From IMG/VR virus record IMGVR_UViG_3300035698_007246, positions 124,001 to 188,000 of that record: 64,000 nt of DNA, one strand, 5' to 3'. Below the pieces are notes generated by a model, which ran no database searches, was not told where the DNA came from, and was given only the letters and a program-made list of their open reading frames with translations. Made by a program: the position numbers and the translations under genes. Shown here piece after piece: positions 18,802-41,835 of this stretch. Numbering within the stretch: the first letter of the stretch is position 1; each line of letters starts with the position of its first letter.

Positions 18802-18947
18802 AAAAAGAAGTAAACAAATTGATATTACCATTTGGTAGAAAATGTAAGATTTGAACTTACACATATTGCTTTTGAGGCAATTGCTCAACCATTGAGCTTA
18901 TTTTCCGATAGGAAATTTGCTGTAATCAATCTTCATTACTTCTTTTT
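18802..18947 (-). ncRNA. clamp element C enclosing an intact tRNA
   Basis: 12-bp P1 AAAAAGAAGTAA/TTACTTCTTTTT plus clamp consensus. Confidence 0.78.
18833..18906 (-). tRNA. tRNA with CAA anticodon and short variable loop (type I)
   Basis: GGAAAAT/ATTTTCT-A-CCA; ATTGC-CTCAAAA-GCAAT; 4-nt variable loop. Confidence 0.8.
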
Positions 18948-20266: not shown

Positions 20267-20448
20267 AGGAACAAATACAAATTGAATTTGTGATTTAAAG
20301 TCTCACAGACCTGAGTTATTTAAGCTCTCCAGCTATTTGTCTCGGATTTGAACCAAGTAAAATCAGGTGTTGCCACCAGATTTGTTAACCAGTTGTAGAT
20401 ACTTGCGTATCAGCTTTGTTTGCAGTAACCAATTTTCAATTTGCCCCT
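20267..20448 (-). ncRNA. clamp element D with T-loop/elbow-like domain
   Basis: P1 AGGGGCAAAT/ATTTGTTCCT; variant clamp; CTTGG-TTCAAAT-CCGAG. Confidence 0.68.
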
Positions 20449-21221: not shown

Positions 21222-21408
21222 AAAAAGAGATACACAGATTGATGTTTTTAAAGTTTATCGTGCTCTCAGCAGACTGAGCTACCTCCCTGCTTAAACATCT
21301 CTCAAGATATCTAAGCAGGGAGGGTGGGATTCCAACCCACGACCACGGCATTATCAGTGCTTTTTAAAAGTTGTATTTTGCAGAAGTCAATCTTCCGTAT
21401 CTCTTTTT
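21222..21408 (-). ncRNA. clamp element E with circularly permuted tRNA-Ile(GAT)
   Basis: 3' half 21316-21360 precedes 5' half 21259-21288; join CG|GCA gives CGGCA-CTGATAA-TGCCG. Confidence 0.82.
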
Positions 21409-21420
21409 ATGTATTTAAAA

Positions 21421-21525
21421 GTAGTCCTCAAATTGTACTTTGCTCCCTGAGCAGTTATCCCCCATCATAGACACTCCTAAGAATGCCGATGGTGGGGGAT
21501 AACGGAATCGAACCGTTGAGTTTTG
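21421..21525 (-). ncRNA. permuted tRNA-like element with internal CCA
   Basis: AACGG-TTCGATT-CCGTT-ATCCCCC-A-CCA, hairpin linker, then GGGGGAT and TGCTC-AGG-GAGCA. Confidence 0.6.
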
Positions 21526-21629: not shown

Positions 21630-21794
21630 AATAGTCTTTATGGAGTGATTTACAAATTGATATTATTCGTCGCTCTGCCAACTGAGCTACCCCTGCATAT
21701 TGAGAGCAGGGGACGAGAATCGAACTCGTGACCCACGGCTTGGAATGCTAAGATTGCTGTAATCAATCTTCAAAATCACTCTATAAAGACTATT
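21630..21794 (-). ncRNA. clamp element F with circularly permuted tRNA-Gly(TCC)
   Basis: 22-nt P1; 3' half 21705-21748 precedes 5' half 21668-21696; join ACG|GC gives ACGGC-ATTCCAA-GCCGT; U73. Confidence 0.85.
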
Positions 21795-21879: not shown

Positions 21880-21884
21880 ATATA

Positions 21885-21965
21885 AGGAACACAATTTGAT
21901 TTTTAGCTACCTTTGTATTTAAAACAAATGCTTTTTTTGTTTGCTGAATTCAAACTTCAGTTCCC
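21885..21965 (-). ncRNA. clamp element G (minimal)
   Basis: Compensatory TTTGA/TCAAA; insert TTTGT-TTTAAAT-ACAAA. Confidence 0.72.
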
Positions 21966-21974
21966 ATGATTTAT

Positions 21975-22096: not shown

Positions 22097-22102
22097 ATAT
22101 AA

Positions 22103-22308
22103 AAGGACTCAGGCTGATATATTATATGGCTGCTCATACACAGGCTCTTTCGAGTTTCTGCCAGCGAGCAGGACATCATTCTTTCGTTTGATTTACCCCA
22201 GACACCGAAATGTCCATCTTGAACAAGACCGTAGCTCACGCCTTAGATATTGTCAACTACCTTAGAACCATTATTCATATAGACTGCTGAATTCAGCCTT
22301 CTGTCCTT
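22103..22308 (-). ncRNA. clamp element H with about 165-nt structured insert
   Basis: Compensatory GGCTGA/TCAGCC; TTCG and GAAA tetraloop hairpins. Confidence 0.7.
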
Positions 22309-22356
22309 ATGAGACTTGTTTGCAAATACGTCAAGGGAATGTTCTTCGTATTAAAA

Positions 22357-22437: not shown

Positions 22438-22530
22438 AAATCGCAACTCAGATTGATGTAAAGCGGTTAAACTTTTCAATAGTTTTGGAAACCTTTTTAG
22501 ATTGCTGAAATCAATCTTCAGTTGCGATTT
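22438..22530 (-). ncRNA. clamp element I (minimal)
   Basis: P1 AAATCGCAAC/GTTGCGATTT; insert AAACT-ATTGAAA-AGTTT. Confidence 0.75.
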
Positions 22531-23210: not shown

Positions 23211-23294
23211 TGGTAGACGCATAGGGACTTGAACCCTAATTTTCAACAACCAATTACGAATATACTGCTTATGAGGCAGTCTCGGTATACGTCT
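23211..23294 (-). tRNA. non-canonical tRNA(CAT): no D arm, D-loop-like variable arm
   Basis: AGACGTA/TGCGTCT-A-CCA; connector TACCGAG; ACTGC-CTCATAA-GCAGT; variable TTCGTAATTGGTTGTTGAA. Confidence 0.75.
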
Positions 23295-25824: not shown

Positions 25825-26319
25825 TTATTTTTCTACATCACCTAAATTTTCAAAGAACTTTTTTGCATATTTATTAACATCATCTAAAATATGTGTCCTA
25901 TACCTGCTATGCCAATAACTATGATGTGTTGGACATAATGGTATTAAATTTTCTGGTTTATTATTTTTACTATCACCATCATAATGATGAACTTCAACAA
26001 TTTTATCTTCATCACAAATAATACATTTCTTTTTATGATAAACAAAACATGTTGTTCGATATGCACAATCTTTCCAATTTGGATGATTAGTACCAGTTCT
26101 AAAATATGTGTTTGCACAACCACAAGAACATGTTGTGCCAGTTTTAAAATTTTTAATTGGTTTATTACAAACCGGACATAATTTTAAATTTTTTGGATTT
26201 AAATAACAACTCTCTTCATGTCTTGATAAATTAGCAACAACCCGCTCCTCTTTACACCATCGACATTTTTGTTTTTTAGTACTTCCAAGTTTTAAATTTT
26301 GTAATGAATTGCTATGCAT
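25825..26319 (-). CDS. HNH homing endonuclease
   Basis: KKCIICDE..IVEVHHYDG...NLIPLCPTHH. Confidence 0.88.
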   Translation of the reverse strand: MHSNSLQNLKLGSTKKQKCRWCKEERVVANLSRHEESCYLNPKNLKLCPVCNKPIKNFKTGTTCSCGCANTYFRTGTNHPNWKDCAYRTTCFVYHKKKCIICDEDKIVEVHHYDGDSKNNKPENLIPLCPTHHSYWHSRYRTHILDDVNKYAKKFFENLGDVEK

Positions 26320-38163: not shown

Positions 38164-41100
38164 TTAAGCCCCACATCCAGAATATCCACAATCATTACAA
38201 ACAAAACATCCACTTTGCATAGCAATACTATCACTTTTACATGTAGGACATATCATTCCGACTATTGTTGTACCATTATCAATTGTTTCAGATACAAATT
38301 TTCTAATTGCAGTTAATAATGTTGATACATTGTCGCCTTCAATACCTTGTAATGAAACAAGAATATCTTGTCGTGCTATGTTATGTCTCAAACAAAGACT
38401 AACCATTCTACCCAATCTATTTGCATTAGTATCACCAAGGCATTTGTCCCAGGTGTCTTCTACAATCTTAACACTAATTCCACAGTCAATAGCAAGCACA
38501 CATAAACTTTTACAAGCCTTAGTACATGCTCTTGTATCATTTTTAGAATTTGTGTTAATCCACAGTGCCATTGGATACTTCATATCAACATCATCAGGGA
38601 AGTAACTGAAATTAATGTAGAATTTCATCCCTTCACGTTTAATCGTCCTTGTAGGGCCGTTAATGAAGGTCTCAGGGAGTTTTACGCCCTTCTTTATGAT
38701 AGTTTTTTCCTCTTCAGCACTTTCAATCTTAGAAAGAACGGATTCCATAGAACCTGTACGGTATGTTGTTACACCAATGAGTCCTTTTTTCCATGCTTCA
38801 AAATATAATTCTTTAAATTTTTCAAATGAATATTTATTTGGTAAATTTATTGTTTTCGAAACAGACTGATTACAGTAATATTGAACTACTTCTTGAATGT
38901 TAAGATGGTCTTCAATTTCCAAATCATCTGTTGTGACCAAGAAATCAGCTTTCTTATGTTCTGGATAATTTTCAAGAATCCAAGCATAACCATAATCACA
39001 AAGCGTATACATTTCACACAAACCTCTATTATGCGGTTCGTAGTAATATTTTGTTCCTTCATAGTATCCCTCCCAGTAAGTAAAATCCTTTTTCTTTTTT
39101 TCTTTAAGGATTGTTTTTACATTATCGGAATTCATGCCTTCAGGAAAAGCACATATCACTTTTCTCTCAGATTTCAAATCAAACACAGGTTCAATTCCAT
39201 TTGATACATTATCACACACCACAGATGAATTACCTAATGGTGGATTGGTTGTGGTTTTAGCATTTCTGAGACCATATTGTTTAATTAATTCTTTTGTTTC
39301 ATCTGTTAATCTATCAGATTTGAAATAAGGTGTCTGACTAAATAAATCATAATTGTATAATGGGAATGACCCTTTTTCTTTAGCCAATAATGCACTTGAT
39401 TGCATTGTAATGTTTTCCTTAAGTTGTTTAATTTTTTTAGTAAACGTAACAGCTTCTTGTGAGTTATATTTAATACCCAACATAACCAATGTAGAACCTA
39501 ATCCATTAATACCCATACCAAACTGTCTTAGATTTTCTACAGCCCATGCATATGATGGTAATGGCAATTCAGTCAAATCACACACATTATCTAACATTCT
39601 TGAGTATGTAACGATGTCTTTTTTATACAATTCCAAATTAAAGTATGGAACATCATTACGGATTTCTACATACATTGTCAAATTAAGTGAACCTAATAGA
39701 CACACAGTAGACATTATTGGATTACCTGGTATCTCACCACATCCTCGACTCACATACCCTTCGGTATTCCAATCATCAGCAGTTGGTTCATGCAAATCAT
39801 AAACATCACCAAATCCAAGAAATTCAATTTCTTTTATTTTAGTTTTCCACTTATTTCCTGTTAATGATGTAGTTTTGATAATTTGTTTTAATTTTTCATT
39901 TTTTTCATCATGACTAAGTTTATGTACAAATTTATAAAAATTTAAAATTGAATCATTATCAATAACACCTTCAAAGATATCATGCCGCCTCACAACATCA
40001 CGTCCATATATTTTTGCTGTCTCACCTTTTTTACCACACAAATATTTCTTATAATCACACCCTGCGGTAAGCATTATATGTTTTACCAATAAATGTAATT
40101 TTTCTGATATATTTTTAAATCTAACTTGTGGATATCGAGAAGTTAAATTCACATTCCCATCAGATGAAATTAACCCATCTATCAATCCAGATAAAAAATC
40201 ATCATTAAAGTTTAACAATTTCATAACATCAAAATTGGATTTATCATTAGCATCAATACCGAAAACATCAAATAATAGTTTAATCTTCCCTTCGGTATTT
40301 ATAGCATAATATCTCTCACAATTTCCATCAGATTTATCGATTCTATAATCAAAACCAAACCTGTTATACAATTCAATTATATAATCATTATTTTCATTTG
40401 AATCTGTTGATATATTAAAGTTTTTATAATTAGAAAAACATCCATCTCCAAAATATAATCCAAATAACATTCCAACATCTCTGATGTCGAATAGTTGCTC
40501 GCCATTTATAGCATCAACAGATATTACGCCATTATCCACACATGATGGATTATACTTAATCATATCATAAGGTTGTTTTCTTACGTTATCACCAACATTT
40601 AAATATTTTAAACGTGTGTTATTGTCCCACCGTTTTCTATTTTCTGATGTTCCATTTTGAGTATGAAAAATATGACCTTCAGTTACACCCTGATAAAACC
40701 CATCTGTGAAATGAACTCTATAAATTGGCTGATTTTCATGAACTTCTATATTATCAACACTACCATGCCCTAACGTTGTTTGAATTTCTTCACCGACTTT
40801 TACATCTTCAACTCGTTTTAGTCCGTGTTTAGTAGCTACTAATGTTCCTTTTACAACACAAGGATTTGTAGCATTACATTCACCCAAATAGAGAATTGGG
40901 TTGTTTTTATTCATGTTATCAACGAATACTATACCCGGTTCAGAGCGATTGTATGTAGATTTCATAATAAGGTCGTAAAGTTTCTTAGCTTTCACACGTT
41001 TTACTACTTTACCATTCCATATTAAGTCCCACATAGCATTATCAGCAACAGCATTCATGAAATCATCACTCACTGCAACACTCATGTTGAATTTAGTTAG

Positions 41101-41835
41101 CTTACCAGACTCTTGTTTTGCTCTAATGAACTCTTCAATGTCAGGGTGCCATACAGAAAGACATCCCATCATAGCACCTTTACGTATATCTTTATCACAT
41201 TCACCAAAATATTCTTTAAGCTCTTCAACAGAAGCATAGTTTTTTAATGAATCAAGGTATCCATCATTGTCACCTTTAACAATACAGTCAGAAACCTTGT
41301 CCCAAATCTCCATATAAGAGATAACTCCGGGGTGTCTAACACCAGTTCCTTTGATTAAACTACCACGAGGTCGTATAAAGTCAAAGTTTATTCCATACCC
41401 ACCCTCGGAAGCAAGAGTTTTTGCTTGTTCCATGATAGATAAGAAGATGTTTACGAGTTCATCTGGTGTATCAGGTGTAGTGATTATTATTTCATTCTTG
41501 AAATGTTCATTCTGTCTTATGTATTTTATAATGGCATTACTAACAGGACCATTAATAAAACAGTTCATTAGTGTAGCATTGTAATAATCAGTTCCTATAT
41601 TGGTTGTAATTCTACCACCCGGTGAACATTTAATACCTAATGGATTCCCCATACTATCAAAACGTATCATTGTTTCAAGAAAAATGGGATACCAATATTC
41701 AGAATCTACTTCATTATTAGCAAGTGCCCTTGCTATTCTTTCAAATGTCCCAAGGGGGGTCTCACCATCATACTGATATTTTCCCTTCCAATTATTATAT
41801 GCAATTTTCGTTTTGAAAAAGTTTTCATCACGCAT
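38164..41835 (-). CDS. nrdJ: class II (B12-dependent) ribonucleotide reductase with intein
   Basis: PGGR, NCF, GGYG.NF..IRPRG, GAMM, NP|CGE, SNGIEP, QSVSKTIN, C-terminal Zn ribbon. Confidence 0.92.
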   Translation of the reverse strand: MRDENFFKTKIAYNNWKGKYQYDGETPLGTFERIARALANNEVDSEYWYPIFLETMIRFDSMGNPLGIKCSPGGRITTNIGTDYYNATLMNCFINGPVSNAIIKYIRQNEHFKNEIIITTPDTPDELVNIFLSIMEQAKTLASEGGYGINFDFIRPRGSLIKGTGVRHPGVISYMEIWDKVSDCIVKGDNDGYLDSLKNYASVEELKEYFGECDKDIRKGAMMGCLSVWHPDIEEFIRAKQESGKLTKFNMSVAVSDDFMNAVADNAMWDLIWNGKVVKRVKAKKLYDLIMKSTYNRSEPGIVFVDNMNKNNPILYLGECNATNPCVVKGTLVATKHGLKRVEDVKVGEEIQTTLGHGSVDNIEVHENQPIYRVHFTDGFYQGVTEGHIFHTQNGTSENRKRWDNNTRLKYLNVGDNVRKQPYDMIKYNPSCVDNGVISVDAINGEQLFDIRDVGMLFGLYFGDGCFSNYKNFNISTDSNENNDYIIELYNRFGFDYRIDKSDGNCERYYAINTEGKIKLLFDVFGIDANDKSNFDVMKLLNFNDDFLSGLIDGLISSDGNVNLTSRYPQVRFKNISEKLHLLVKHIMLTAGCDYKKYLCGKKGETAKIYGRDVVRRHDIFEGVIDNDSILNFYKFVHKLSHDEKNEKLKQIIKTTSLTGNKWKTKIKEIEFLGFGDVYDLHEPTADDWNTEGYVSRGCGEIPGNPIMSTVCLLGSLNLTMYVEIRNDVPYFNLELYKKDIVTYSRMLDNVCDLTELPLPSYAWAVENLRQFGMGINGLGSTLVMLGIKYNSQEAVTFTKKIKQLKENITMQSSALLAKEKGSFPLYNYDLFSQTPYFKSDRLTDETKELIKQYGLRNAKTTTNPPLGNSSVVCDNVSNGIEPVFDLKSERKVICAFPEGMNSDNVKTILKEKKKKDFTYWEGYYEGTKYYYEPHNRGLCEMYTLCDYGYAWILENYPEHKKADFLVTTDDLEIEDHLNIQEVVQYYCNQSVSKTINLPNKYSFEKFKELYFEAWKKGLIGVTTYRTGSMESVLSKIESAEEEKTIIKKGVKLPETFINGPTRTIKREGMKFYINFSYFPDDVDMKYPMALWINTNSKNDTRACTKACKSLCVLAIDCGISVKIVEDTWDKCLGDTNANRLGRMVSLCLRHNIARQDILVSLQGIEGDNVSTLLTAIRKFVSETIDNGTTIVGMICPTCKSDSIAMQSGCFVCNDCGYSGCGA
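39742..40860 (-). mobile_element. LAGLIDADG intein in nrdJ (373 aa) ending in Gly
   Basis: Starts CVVKGTLV after NP; LIDGLISSDG; ends YVSRG before CGE. Confidence 0.85.

What the first reader, a model, noticed from the sequence alone, without database searches (positions are those of the whole stretch)
21222..21408. Circularly permuted tRNA-Ile(GAU) gene inside clamp E
The 3' half (GCA-CTGATAA-TGCCG-TGGTC-GTGGG-TTGGAAT-CCCAC-CCTCCCT-G) precedes a hairpin linker and the 5' half (AGGGAGG-TA-GCTC...GAGC-A-CG). Joining CG|GCA (28/29) restores a perfect 5-bp anticodon stem. The junction context CG|GC, flanked by A on both sides, is the same as in the permuted Gly gene, which suggests a shared mechanism. 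No canonical Ile(GAU) tRNA is seen in this window. G73 and G56 are atypical.
Basis: partly seen in the sequence, partly recalled or inferred. Interest (0 to 1): 0.88.

Follow-up and report, generated by a model that had tools for sequence, protein, structure and literature searches.

The report
Phage Y RNA carrying permuted tRNA-Ile
The sequence is a complete tRNA-Ile written in rotated order inside a long stem, but it is most likely a tRNA-mimicking "Y RNA" for a Ro60-like protein that the phage encodes next to its tRNA cluster, and not a gene for a working tRNA.

Summary
On the minus strand, 21408->21222 reads: stem arm, tRNA 3' half, 27-nt hairpin, tRNA 5' half, stem arm. Joining the halves in silico gives a cloverleaf that ARAGORN calls tRNA-Ile(GAU).

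The "clamp" is a conserved module, (G)AAG-helix-UnCAGCAA ... helix'-CUG(U/A). It occurs nine times in this phage's tRNA array and in dozens of other large-phage contigs, including an E. coli Felixounavirus.

Its cargo varies: permuted tRNA-like domains with or without an anticodon arm, bare anticodon hairpins, acceptor-less tRNAs and ordinary tRNAs. Rfam's nearest model is YrlA, the tRNA-mimicking bacterial Y RNA, but the score is below its threshold.

A gene starting 385 nt beyond the window's left edge encodes a DUF2828 protein whose predicted fold matches Ro60. RtcB lies about 8 kb further on. In relatives the clamps sit 15-700 nt from this gene, as Y RNAs sit beside rsr.

An orthologue keeps the Ile anticodon arm exactly and shows compensatory changes elsewhere. 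Related elements with homologous bodies carry other loops, some lacking U33 or 8 nt long.

Best reading: a new variant of Y RNA that displays a whole permuted tRNA-Ile. Maturation into a decoding tRNA by RtcB is not excluded but is unlikely.

The parts
21397..21408 (-). Outer clamp stem, 5' arm (AAAAAGAGATAC)
   Evidence: 12/12 complementary to 21222-21233 (I9). The outer stem covaries across family members.
21378..21396 (-). Conserved clamp core, 5' strand: bulged G (21396), GAAGATTGA (21395-21387), C, then TTCTGCAA (21385-21378)
   Evidence: The motif occurs 9 times on this strand against 2.8 expected. In 39 members: bulge, G.U, A.G, then a 7-bp helix. UnCAGCAA is near-invariant.
21361..21377 (-). 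A/U-rich 5' spacer between the clamp core and the tRNA part
   Evidence: Read directly. Its length differs between copies: 5-17 nt.
21348..21360 (-). Anticodon hairpin GCA-CTGATAA-TGC (tRNA positions 29-41, anticodon GAU)
   Evidence: Identical in orthologue L055. The 3-bp stem covaries in the 2+3 lineage.
21341..21347 (-). CG (positions 42-43) and variable loop TGGTC
   Evidence: The CG pairs with the CG at 21260-21259.
21324..21340 (-). T-arm GTGGG-TTGGAAT-CCCAC, with G56
   Evidence: The stem covaries. G56 is matched by C19, while L055 has C56/G19.
21316..21323 (-). Acceptor 3' strand CCTCCCT plus G73
   Evidence: Pair 7:66 changes from G-C to A-U in L055.
21289..21315 (-). Linker hairpin that extends the acceptor helix by 12 bp (loop TGAG)
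   Evidence: The fold shows a continuous 19-bp helix. The helix is kept in L055 despite many substitutions.
21259..21288 (-). tRNA 5' half: AGGGAGG, TA, D-arm (GCTC-AGTCTGCTGA-GAGC), A26, C27 G28
21243..21258 (-). A-rich 3' spacer
   Evidence: Read directly.
21234..21242 (-). Conserved clamp core, 3' strand TCAATCTGT
   Evidence: Partner of the 5' core. The helix covaries.
21222..21233 (-). Outer clamp stem, 3' arm (GTATCTCTTTTT)
   Evidence: I9.
21644..21780 (-). Sister clamp carrying a permuted tRNA-Gly(UCC), junction 29/30
   Evidence: Hits Rfam YrlA at 36.7 bits.
17117..17260 (-). Clamp with a permuted T-arm / closed acceptor / D-arm domain and no clear anticodon arm
   Evidence: identical copy in L085.
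17274..17606 (-). Clamp with a 289-nt cargo: a T-arm, and acceptor strands 171 nt apart
18806..18943 (-). Clamp enclosing an ordinary, unpermuted tRNA (ARAGORN: Leu-CAA, 18833-18906, encoded CCA)
   Evidence: The orthologue in L020 has anticodon ACA.
20269..20446 (-). Clamp with a 134-nt cargo that contains a T-arm
   Evidence: Orthologues in L020 and L104.
21883..21967 (-). Clamp whose cargo is only a 5-bp/7-nt hairpin, loop UUUAAAU (anticodon-like UAA)
22101..22310 (-). Clamp (GAAGGCUGA / UCAGCCUGA, a fully compensated inner helix) with a 166-nt cargo of unknown fold
   Evidence: Orthologue in L159.
22440..22528 (-). Clamp whose cargo holds a 5-bp/7-nt hairpin, loop AUUGAAA (anticodon-like UGA)

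Best explanation
The element is a phage Y RNA of the tRNA-mimic (YrlA-like) kind.

Its 5' and 3' ends pair into a long stem. The conserved part of that stem is a bulged nucleotide, G.U, A.G, a 7-bp helix and the loop UnCAGCAA. This part is the docking site for the phage's Ro60-like ring protein, a DUF2828/DUF7788 protein whose gene starts 385 nt beyond window position 1, on the same strand.

The far end of the stem displays a complete tRNA-Ile(GAU) body in rotated order. It has the L-shaped core and an authentic anticodon arm, but the acceptor end is closed by a long hairpin.

The RNA stays in one piece, or at most is nicked in the acceptor loop. It works as a mimic: it tethers or decoys a factor that recognises tRNA-Ile, either its anticodon loop or its whole body. 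It does this within an RNA-repair or counter-defence module that also includes RtcB.

Shown here: the anatomy, the covariation, the family, the Ro60-like predicted fold and the gene-RNA adjacency.
Inferred: that the protein binds the clamp, that the RNA is not rejoined, and what the mimic captures.
For: 1. The topology is that of YrlA. Rfam's YrlA model aligns in the order T-arm, closed acceptor hairpin, D-arm inside a terminal stem, at 30.7 bits for Ile and 36.7 bits for Gly.

2. The clamp is a module with interchangeable cargo. It occurs nine times in this array, and there are dozens of members in viral and metagenome contigs. It also occurs in E. coli phage heid.

3. The structure is selected. 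97.6% of cells are paired and 26 of 31 pairs have double changes, reached by 0 of 500 shuffles. When partners are slid, only 35-48% pair.

4. The neighbouring DUF2828 protein models with pLDDT 87 and pTM 0.86. Its nine best PDB matches are all Ro60/Rsr, with E down to 1.4e-9 and TM about 0.6 for eight of the nine (0.38 for D. radiodurans Rsr). The MIDAS residues D-x-S-x-S are invariant. Mycobacteriophage homologues are annotated 'Ro-like RNA binding protein'.

5. Adjacency:
- 19 loci fetched only by the RNA pattern encode the protein, with clamps 15-700 nt away on the same strand in 17 of them.
- Four homologues chosen by protein alone all have 2-4 clamps in the flanking intergenic DNA.

6. 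RtcB lies about 8 kb beyond the window, as in the rsr-yrlA-rtcB operon (PMC7790460).

7. Orthologue L055 keeps GCA-CUGAUAA-UGC-CG exactly, with compensated changes at 7:66 and 19:56 and in the acceptor extension.

8. The same CUGAUAA loop is displayed alone on clamps in L156 and L159.

9. Bas63 gp130, a Ro60-like protein encoded just upstream of that phage's tRNA genes, counters the ppl defence system. Its authors guessed that some of the 'tRNAs' are Y RNAs (PMC11482910).
Against: - No binding data exist. The link between protein and clamp rests on adjacency alone.
- The stem lacks the GNCGAAN0-1G / CGAA motif of known Y RNAs (PMC4201824, PMC12135203).
- The Rfam score is far below YrlA's threshold of 69.
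- In this phage the Ile copy lies 21.6 kb from the Ro-like gene.
- A perfect, conserved anticodon arm and the absence of a canonical tRNA-Ile(GAU) in the array would also fit a real tRNA precursor.
- RtcB could in principle join the halves.
- Some relatives encode CCA after the acceptor strand (L059, L071, L130).
- Members used for the covariation counts were partly chosen by pairing criteria, which inflates the percentage paired.
Confidence: 0.66

Rival explanations
1. It is a true circularly permuted tRNA gene. An endonuclease cuts at both ends of the tRNA part and RtcB joins G28 to G29, giving a circle. RNase P and 3' trimming then open the linker, CCA is added, and the product decodes AUC/AUU.
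For: - The joined sequence is a canonical tRNA-Ile(GAU).
- The anticodon arm is identical in an orthologue.
- No canonical Ile(GAU) is found in a 27-tRNA array.
- RtcB is encoded about 8 kb beyond the window.
- The split anticodon stem is kept by covariation in two lineages.
Against: - There is no bulge-helix-bulge and no known bacterial or phage enzyme for such cuts.
- The spacers between clamp core and junction vary from 5 to 17 nt, and the junction context is not conserved.
- The acceptor helix is extended by a conserved 12-bp hairpin with G73 paired.
- G73 replaces the A73 that I recall E. coli IleRS requiring; this was not tested here.
- The same clamp carries cargo that cannot form a tRNA.
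- Related elements with homologous bodies have A33 in place of U33, an 8-nt loop, or another anticodon on the same acceptor stem.
- A separate Ile-type tRNA-like gene with an ACCA end exists at 12658->12576.
Confidence: 0.1
2. It is a two-piece tRNA-like molecule. RNase P and 3' processing open the acceptor loop, as in M. smegmatis YrlA or two-piece tmRNA, and CCA is added. The RNA is aminoacylated while still held together by the clamp, and serves something other than ordinary decoding.
For: - M. smegmatis YrlA is cut by RNase P and receives CCA in vivo (PMC4201824).
- All acceptor stems in the permuted members are 7 bp.
- Several relatives encode (N)CCA right after the acceptor strand.
- A permuted tRNA-like domain with ACCA lies between the Gly and Ile clamps.
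Against: This particular element has no CCA, and its acceptor helix runs on for 12 more pairs. That makes it a poor RNase P substrate. A roughly 25-bp helix projecting from the anticodon stem would not fit a ribosomal tRNA site; both points are inference from established tRNA-ribosome geometry.
Confidence: 0.12
3. The clamps are only processing or stabilising stems for a polycistronic tRNA transcript, for example double-strand RNase sites. They have no relation to the Ro60-like protein, and the permuted tRNAs are decaying gene remnants.
For: One clamp encloses an ordinary tRNA. Long terminal stems are classic RNase III substrates (established knowledge).
Against: - The conserved non-Watson-Crick core and the UnCAGCAA loop point to a specific ligand.
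- Clamps flank the Ro-like gene even where no tRNA array is near.
- The tRNA-like parts show compensatory change, including the tertiary 19:56 pair. That is the opposite of decay.
Confidence: 0.08
4. It is a chance resemblance.
For: None beyond the AT-rich flanks.
Against: Shuffle null of 0.8%; folding z-scores of -6 to -8; an orthologue; covariation.
Confidence: 0.01

Closest known systems
YrlA, the tRNA-mimicking bacterial/phage Y RNA (Rfam RF02553; Chen et al. 2014, PMC4201824)
   Same: - A terminal stem made by the 5' and 3' ends.
- Above the stem, a tRNA-like domain in the order T-arm, closed acceptor-like hairpin, D-arm.
- Encoded with a Ro60-type protein and near RtcB.
- Several copies per genome.
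   Different: - The stem motif is (G)AAG-helix-UnCAGCAA / helix'-CUG, not GNCGAAN0-1G.
- The score is 30.7 bits against a threshold of 69.
- This element adds a full anticodon arm with an authentic Ile loop, so the whole tRNA is present.
- The partner protein is filed in Pfam as DUF2828/DUF7788, not TROVE.
- The cargo is modular: anticodon hairpin only, acceptor-less tRNA, or ordinary tRNA.
M. smegmatis YrlA (cut by RNase P, CCA added)
   Same: A 7-bp acceptor stem in a permuted tRNA-like domain. Relatives of this element encode CCA.
   Different: Here the acceptor helix is lengthened by 12 bp and there is no CCA. Whether it is processed is unknown.
Circularly permuted tRNA genes of Cyanidioschyzon merolae, some green algae and Thermofilum
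   Same: The 3' half lies upstream of the 5' half with a short linker, and the flanks pair. Rotating the sequence restores a canonical cloverleaf.
   Different: - Those use a bulge-helix-bulge cut by the splicing endonuclease and a circular intermediate, in eukaryotes and archaea.
- Here there is no such motif.
- The setting is a T4-like phage.
- The junction lies inside the anticodon stem (28/29).
- Sister elements cannot give tRNAs.
Two-piece (permuted) tmRNA
   Same: The gene order is T-arm / acceptor 3' strand, then spacer, then acceptor 5' strand. A long helix takes the place where the anticodon stem leaves the body.
   Different: This element has no CCA, no G3.U70 and no tag reading frame. 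It has a real D-arm and a real anticodon arm.
Felixounavirus Bas63 gp130 (Ro60-like protein that counters the ppl defence system; PMC11482910) and Thermus phage phiLo Ro60 with Yrl1/2 (PMC12135203)
   Same: A phage Ro60-type protein encoded next to small structured RNAs or a tRNA array. The E. coli Felixounavirus heid has the same clamps in its tRNA array.
   Different: The Bas63 authors only guessed that Y RNAs hide among the tRNAs. The phiLo Yrls carry the CGAA motif and no tRNA-like domain was reported for them.

Membership tests
Circularly permuted tRNA gene (C. merolae type) | 3' half upstream of 5' half, joined by a linker | tested here: met
Circularly permuted tRNA gene (C. merolae type) | Rotation gives a canonical cloverleaf with a 7-nt anticodon loop | tested here: met
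   ARAGORN calls tRNA-Ile(gat) on the joined halves.
Circularly permuted tRNA gene (C. merolae type) | Bulge-helix-bulge at the junction, for the splicing endonuclease | tested here: not met
   The flanks are 17- and 16-nt A/U-rich spacers leading into a bulged helix. No 3-4-3 motif is present. No endonuclease domain was found in the 40 window ORFs scanned.
Circularly permuted tRNA gene (C. merolae type) | Anticodon and identity elements conserved, as in a decoding tRNA | tested here: inconclusive
   The anticodon arm is identical in L055. However, the same acceptor stem carries GUU in L071. The Gly lineage shows A33 in place of U33 in L159 and L104, and an 8-nt loop in L162. G73 replaces A73.
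Circularly permuted tRNA gene (C. merolae type) | Circular intermediate and mature joined tRNA | not testable with these tools
   Needs RNA from infected cells.
Y RNA / YrlA (RF02553) | Encoded beside a Ro60 orthologue | tested here: met
   A gene with a Ro60-like predicted fold starts 385 nt beyond window position 1. Clamps lie 15-700 nt from homologues in 17 of 19 loci, and in 4 of 4 independently chosen loci. This copy itself is 21.6 kb away.
Y RNA / YrlA (RF02553) | Long stem formed by the 5' and 3' ends, with a bulged conserved helix | tested here: met
Y RNA / YrlA (RF02553) | GNCGAAN0-1G (CGAA) motif in the stem | tested here: not met
   The core reads (U)GAAG...; none of the nine window copies has CGAA there.
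Y RNA / YrlA (RF02553) | tRNA-like domain: T-arm, closed acceptor hairpin, D-arm | tested here: met
   Rfam alignment; covariation.
Y RNA / YrlA (RF02553) | Reaches Rfam's gathering score | tested here: not met
   30.7 bits (Ile) and 36.7 bits (Gly) against 69. Nothing was found in coliphage heid either.
Y RNA / YrlA (RF02553) | Bound by the Ro60 protein | not testable with these tools
   Needs EMSA or CLIP.
Ro60/TROVE protein (the presumed partner) | Ring of helical repeats plus a vWA domain with a MIDAS site | tested here: met
   The top nine Foldseek matches are Ro60/Rsr. D275, S277 and S279 are invariant.
Ro60/TROVE protein (the presumed partner) | Matches Pfam TROVE, or a solved Ro60 by sequence | tested here: not met
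   Pfam gives DUF2828 + DUF7788 only. phmmer against PDB sequences finds nothing.
Two-piece tmRNA | Encoded CCA, G3.U70 and a tag reading frame | tested here: not met
   No CCA after G73, and position 3:70 is G-C. ARAGORN finds no tmRNA in the window.

The most novel reading that the evidence does not exclude
The Ro60-like particle and RtcB mature this clamp-held, permuted precursor into a working tRNA-Ile, or into a charged two-piece tRNA. That would be the first permuted or split tRNA gene in a bacterial virus, with the Y-RNA stem playing the part that the bulge-helix-bulge plays in archaea and algae.
Probability: 0.12. Interest if true: 0.92.

Novelty: new variant of a known kind. Interest (0 to 1): 0.68.

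Why it matters
Y RNAs that mimic tRNA are known, but what the mimicry is for is an open question. Several findings here bear on it.

- **A complete mimic.** The L-shaped core is kept by compensatory change, including the 19:56 tertiary pair. It carries an authentic, conserved Ile anticodon loop.
- **A modular stem.** In relatives the same protein-docking stem displays bare anticodon hairpins, acceptor-less tRNAs or ordinary tRNAs. This suggests the particle presents chosen tRNA parts to something that reads anticodon loops, such as an enzyme, a nuclease or a defence system.
- **A candidate RNA partner for a widespread protein family.** The DUF2828 "RNA-binding / vWFA / Ro-like" proteins occur in 692 cultured-phage records, among them Felix O1-like, T4-like, Listeria, Staphylococcus and mycobacteriophages. 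The RNA motif proposed as their partner has no Rfam model.
- **A testable system.** The same clamps occur in an E. coli K-12 phage. A homologous protein was reported to counter a defence system (PMC11482910). The question can therefore be tested in a laboratory strain.
- **An annotation warning.** tRNA counts and "missing" isoacceptors in phage arrays can mislead, because some tRNA-like genes there are probably not tRNAs.

Tried and rejected
**Searches that found nothing useful**
- Near and distant BLAST of the locus and of a 14-kb gene block against cultured phages gave no match.
- Pfam on 40 window ORFs found no TROVE domain, RNA ligase or endonuclease inside the window. The relevant genes lie just outside it.
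- A sequence search of the DUF2828 protein against PDB found nothing. Only the predicted fold revealed Ro60.
- A literature search for DUF2828 gave nothing relevant.
- The supplements of Chen et al. 2014 are not held. I therefore could not check which phages they had already listed.

**Methods that were too noisy**
- The first pattern scan with the 18-mer motif returned mostly chance hits, 51 where about 46 were expected by my own rough estimate (no tool gave an expectation for this scan).
- My first ungapped partner finder was too noisy.
- The genome-contig scan gave 20 hits. None had a partner strand or a Ro-like gene.

**Ideas considered and dropped**
- Self-cleaving ribozymes in the flanks: no Rfam hit at E <= 10.
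- A K-turn or box C/D reading of GAAG/CUGA: the position opposite the G is U in 30 of 39 members and the bulge is only one nucleotide.
- A bulge-helix-bulge: absent.
- Halves of a group I intron: the arms are far too short.
- A mobile inverted-repeat element: the outer stems differ between copies yet are always compensated.

Full report
**What is there**

The window is part of a T4-like phage genome. It encodes a family B polymerase, the gp44 clamp loader, gp32, a UvsX-like RecA, RNase H and ribonucleotide reductase. Almost all genes lie on the minus strand. A tRNA array holds 27 ARAGORN calls between 1.8 and 26.6 kb.

Read on the minus strand, the finding is exactly as described. A 12-nt arm (21408-21397) is perfectly complementary to 21233-21222. 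Between the arms lie, in order:
- GCA-CTGATAA-TGC-CG, the variable loop, the T-arm, CCTCCCT and G;
- a 27-nt hairpin;
- AGGGAGG-TA-D-arm-A-CG.

ARAGORN calls the rotated sequence tRNA-Ile(gat), and the neighbouring element (21780-21644) tRNA-Gly(tcc). The piece folds far better than shuffles do (z = -7.6). When the spacers of such elements are shuffled, an anticodon arm can be reconstituted in only 17 of 2016 trials.

**The clamp is a repeated module**

The 5' arm ends in GAAGATTGA-n-T-n-C-n-GCAA. This motif occurs nine times on the minus strand, all inside the tRNA array, against 2.8 expected. Each copy has a downstream partner TCAAT(C/T)TG(T/A). Each also has outer arms that differ between copies but are always complementary.

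The cargo of the nine copies differs:
- three permuted tRNA-like domains (17251, Ile, Gly);
- one ordinary tRNA (18833-18906);
- two bare 5-bp/7-nt hairpins with anticodon-like loops (UUUAAAU, AUUGAAA);
- three longer RNAs.

**The family outside the window**

Pattern scans of viral and metagenome contigs recovered the window's own 224-kb contig and dozens of true members in other large-phage contigs. A scan of 185,579 bacterial and archaeal genomes gave only chance hits.

In 39 confident members the core has these features:
- a one-nucleotide bulge, U in 29;
- a G.U pair in 30;
- an A.G mismatch in 38;
- a 7-bp helix whose variable positions covary;
- the loop U-n-CAGCAA.

In more distant relatives the helix sequence is entirely different but fully compensated.

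RNAalifold on eight members predicted the two clamp helices, the T-arm, the acceptor stem and the D-arm unaided. 26 of 31 pairs had double changes. 97.6% of cells are paired, against 72.6% in shuffles and 35-48% when the partners are slid.

One caveat applies. I chose members partly by pairing criteria, so the percentage paired is inflated. The compensatory changes are not affected by this.

**What it resembles, and the neighbouring genes**

The only Rfam model that aligns to the permuted part is YrlA, the tRNA-mimicking Y RNA. Scores are 30.7 bits (Ile) and 36.7 bits (Gly), below the threshold of 69. The aligned order is T-arm, closed acceptor hairpin, D-arm within a terminal stem.

Y RNAs are defined by their Ro60 partner, and no such gene lies inside the window. 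A look-up of a window protein returned a contig that is 100% identical over 3310 nt and runs past window position 1.
- 385 nt beyond the edge, on the same strand, starts a 485-aa DUF2828/DUF7788 protein.
- About 8 kb further lies RtcB (E = 2.8e-95).
- A SpoU-type methylase lies beyond that.

The DUF2828 protein has no sequence match among solved structures. Its AlphaFold model (pLDDT 87, pTM 0.86) matches Ro60/Rsr in all nine top Foldseek hits, with E down to 1.4e-9 and TM about 0.6 over the full length for eight of them. The MIDAS D-x-S-x-S residues are invariant. Homologues in mycobacteriophages are annotated "Ro-like RNA binding protein".

**Gene-RNA association**

- Of the loci fetched only by the RNA pattern, 19 encode this protein. 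In 17 of them clamps lie 15-700 nt from the gene on the same strand, often on both sides.
- In the reverse direction, I picked four homologues by protein similarity alone (48-56% identity; contigs of 22 to 524 kb). All four have two to four clamps in the flanking intergenic DNA.
- The E. coli K-12 Felixounavirus heid has the gene directly upstream of its tRNA array, and two clamps inside the array. One of these carries a permuted tRNA-like domain. Rfam has no model for them.

This is the arrangement by which bacterial Y RNAs were recognised (PMC4201824).

**What relatives say about the Ile element**

L055:13394-13557 is an orthologue, 81% identical. Comparing it with the window element:
- the anticodon hairpin and the CG/CG pairs are identical;
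- pair 7:66 changes from G-C to A-U;
- the 12-bp extension of the acceptor helix is kept through many substitutions;
- G73 is kept.

The fold and the Ile loop are therefore under selection, and so is the closure of the acceptor end.

A "2+3" lineage shares the junction (A-CG | ... | NNN-loop-N'N'N'-CG). Its 3-bp stem covaries and its loops differ:

| Locus | Loop | Note |
|---|---|---|
| window, L055 | CUGAUAA | Ile |
| L071 | AUGUUAA | same acceptor stem as L055; encoded GCCA |
| L111 | AAUGGGA | |
| L169 | UUUGGGA | |
| L059 | CUUGAAA | encoded ACCA |

The "3+2" lineage of the Gly element keeps ACG|GC...GC-CGU. Its loops read AUUCCAA (window), AAUCCAA (L159), CAUUUAA (L104) and the 8-nt AUUGAUAA (L162).

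Other members have the whole anticodon arm on the 5' side (L031, L081, L087) or on the 3' side (L054). In a stringent sample, half of the permuted domains have no anticodon arm (12 of 24). The CUGAUAA loop is also shown alone on clamps in L156 and L159.

This pattern does not look like the evolution of decoding tRNAs. It looks like a scaffold that presents tRNA parts.

**Most likely mechanism**

The RNA is a Y RNA. The Ro60-like ring binds the conserved bulged helix and loop. The rotated tRNA-Ile body, closed at the acceptor end, mimics tRNA-Ile. It tethers or decoys a factor that reads the Ile anticodon loop or the whole tRNA shape, within an RNA-repair or counter-defence module that includes RtcB.

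Two published results fit this:
- the rsr-yrlA-rtcB operon (PMC7790460);
- the report that a Ro60-like protein of Felixounavirus Bas63, encoded just upstream of its tRNA genes, counters the ppl defence system (PMC11482910).

Still inferred: the binding itself, the absence of rejoining, and the identity of the captured factor.

**Rivals**

- A true permuted tRNA matured by RtcB remains possible, at about 0.1. The product would be canonical, the arm is conserved and the array has no canonical Ile(GAU).
  - Against it: no cutting signal; variable spacers; a junction context that is not conserved; a closed and extended acceptor helix; G73; and sister cargo that cannot become tRNA.
  - In addition, a separate Ile-type tRNA-like gene with an ACCA end sits at 12658->12576.
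- A two-piece, CCA-tailed form, as in M. smegmatis YrlA, is plausible for relatives that encode CCA. It is less plausible for this copy.
- A mere processing stem does not explain the conserved non-canonical core or the clamps beside the Ro-like gene.

**Novelty**

Phage Ro60 homologues and YrlA-like RNAs are known (PMC4201824, PMC12135203, PMC7824862). What I did not find described:
- this stem motif;
- its pairing with the DUF2828 clade;
- the modular cargo;
- a Y RNA that contains an entire permuted tRNA with an authentic anticodon arm.

I file it as a new variant of a known kind.

Noticed in passing
window 21440-21517 (minus strand), between the Gly and Ile clamps: A third permuted tRNA-like domain: T-arm, ATCCCCC-A-CCA, a 25-nt spacer, then GGGGGAT. 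It has an encoded CCA. Its best Rfam matches are to the tRNA-like domain of permuted tmRNAs (beta_tmRNA 40.1 bits, tmRNA_permuted 27.2 bits, both below threshold). No tag reading frame and no clear clamp were seen. L058 carries a similar domain inside a clamp.
   Followed up: partly
window 12576-12658 and 23211-23294 (minus strand): Two tRNA-like genes found only by Rfam (34.7 and 35.2 bits) share an odd, rearranged layout. The order is acceptor, UA, CCGA, then directly a 5-bp/7-nt anticodon arm (CUGAUAA = Ile-GAU; CUCAUAA = CAU), then UCG, then UAAUUGGU-n-GUUGA-n-AAU, T-arm, acceptor and ACCA. The D-loop-like sequence sits after the anticodon arm instead of before it. Both are of the Ile/Met type.
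   Followed up: partly
window 18806-18943 and L020:3376-3520: An ordinary tRNA with an encoded CCA sits inside a clamp. Its anticodon is CAA in the window and ACA in the orthologue, on an otherwise very similar body.
   Followed up: partly
window 22101-22310; L159:~840-1020 (minus strand): A clamp with a conserved 166-nt cargo of unknown structure. Its inner helix is fully compensated (GGCUGA/UCAGCC). Two other clamps also carry long cargoes: 17274-17606 (289 nt) and 20269-20446 (134 nt).
   Followed up: no
window 9485-9560: ARAGORN reports a tRNA with anticodon CTA (labelled Pyl), that is, a possible amber suppressor in the phage array.
   Followed up: no
window 38164-41835: The large subunit of ribonucleotide reductase is interrupted by a LAGLIDADG domain and is probably intein-containing. 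Several HNH endonuclease ORFs lie among the tRNA genes (844-1440, 5811-6527, 25828-26319).
   Followed up: no
L198 (Escherichia phage heid, MN850577.1) about 9260-9560: Two clamps of the same design lie in the tRNA array of a cultured E. coli K-12 phage, 0.9-1.2 kb downstream of its Ro60-like 'vWFA protein' gene. One carries a permuted T-arm / acceptor / D-arm domain. Neither is annotated, and Rfam has no model for them.
   Followed up: partly
family-wide: The loops displayed on clamps are often anticodon loops with U34 (UGA, UAA, UUU, UCU, UUG, UCC), besides GAU and GUU. These are the tRNA classes whose wobble base is heavily modified and which known anticodon nucleases attack. The last point is from my own recollection and was not tested.
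   Followed up: no
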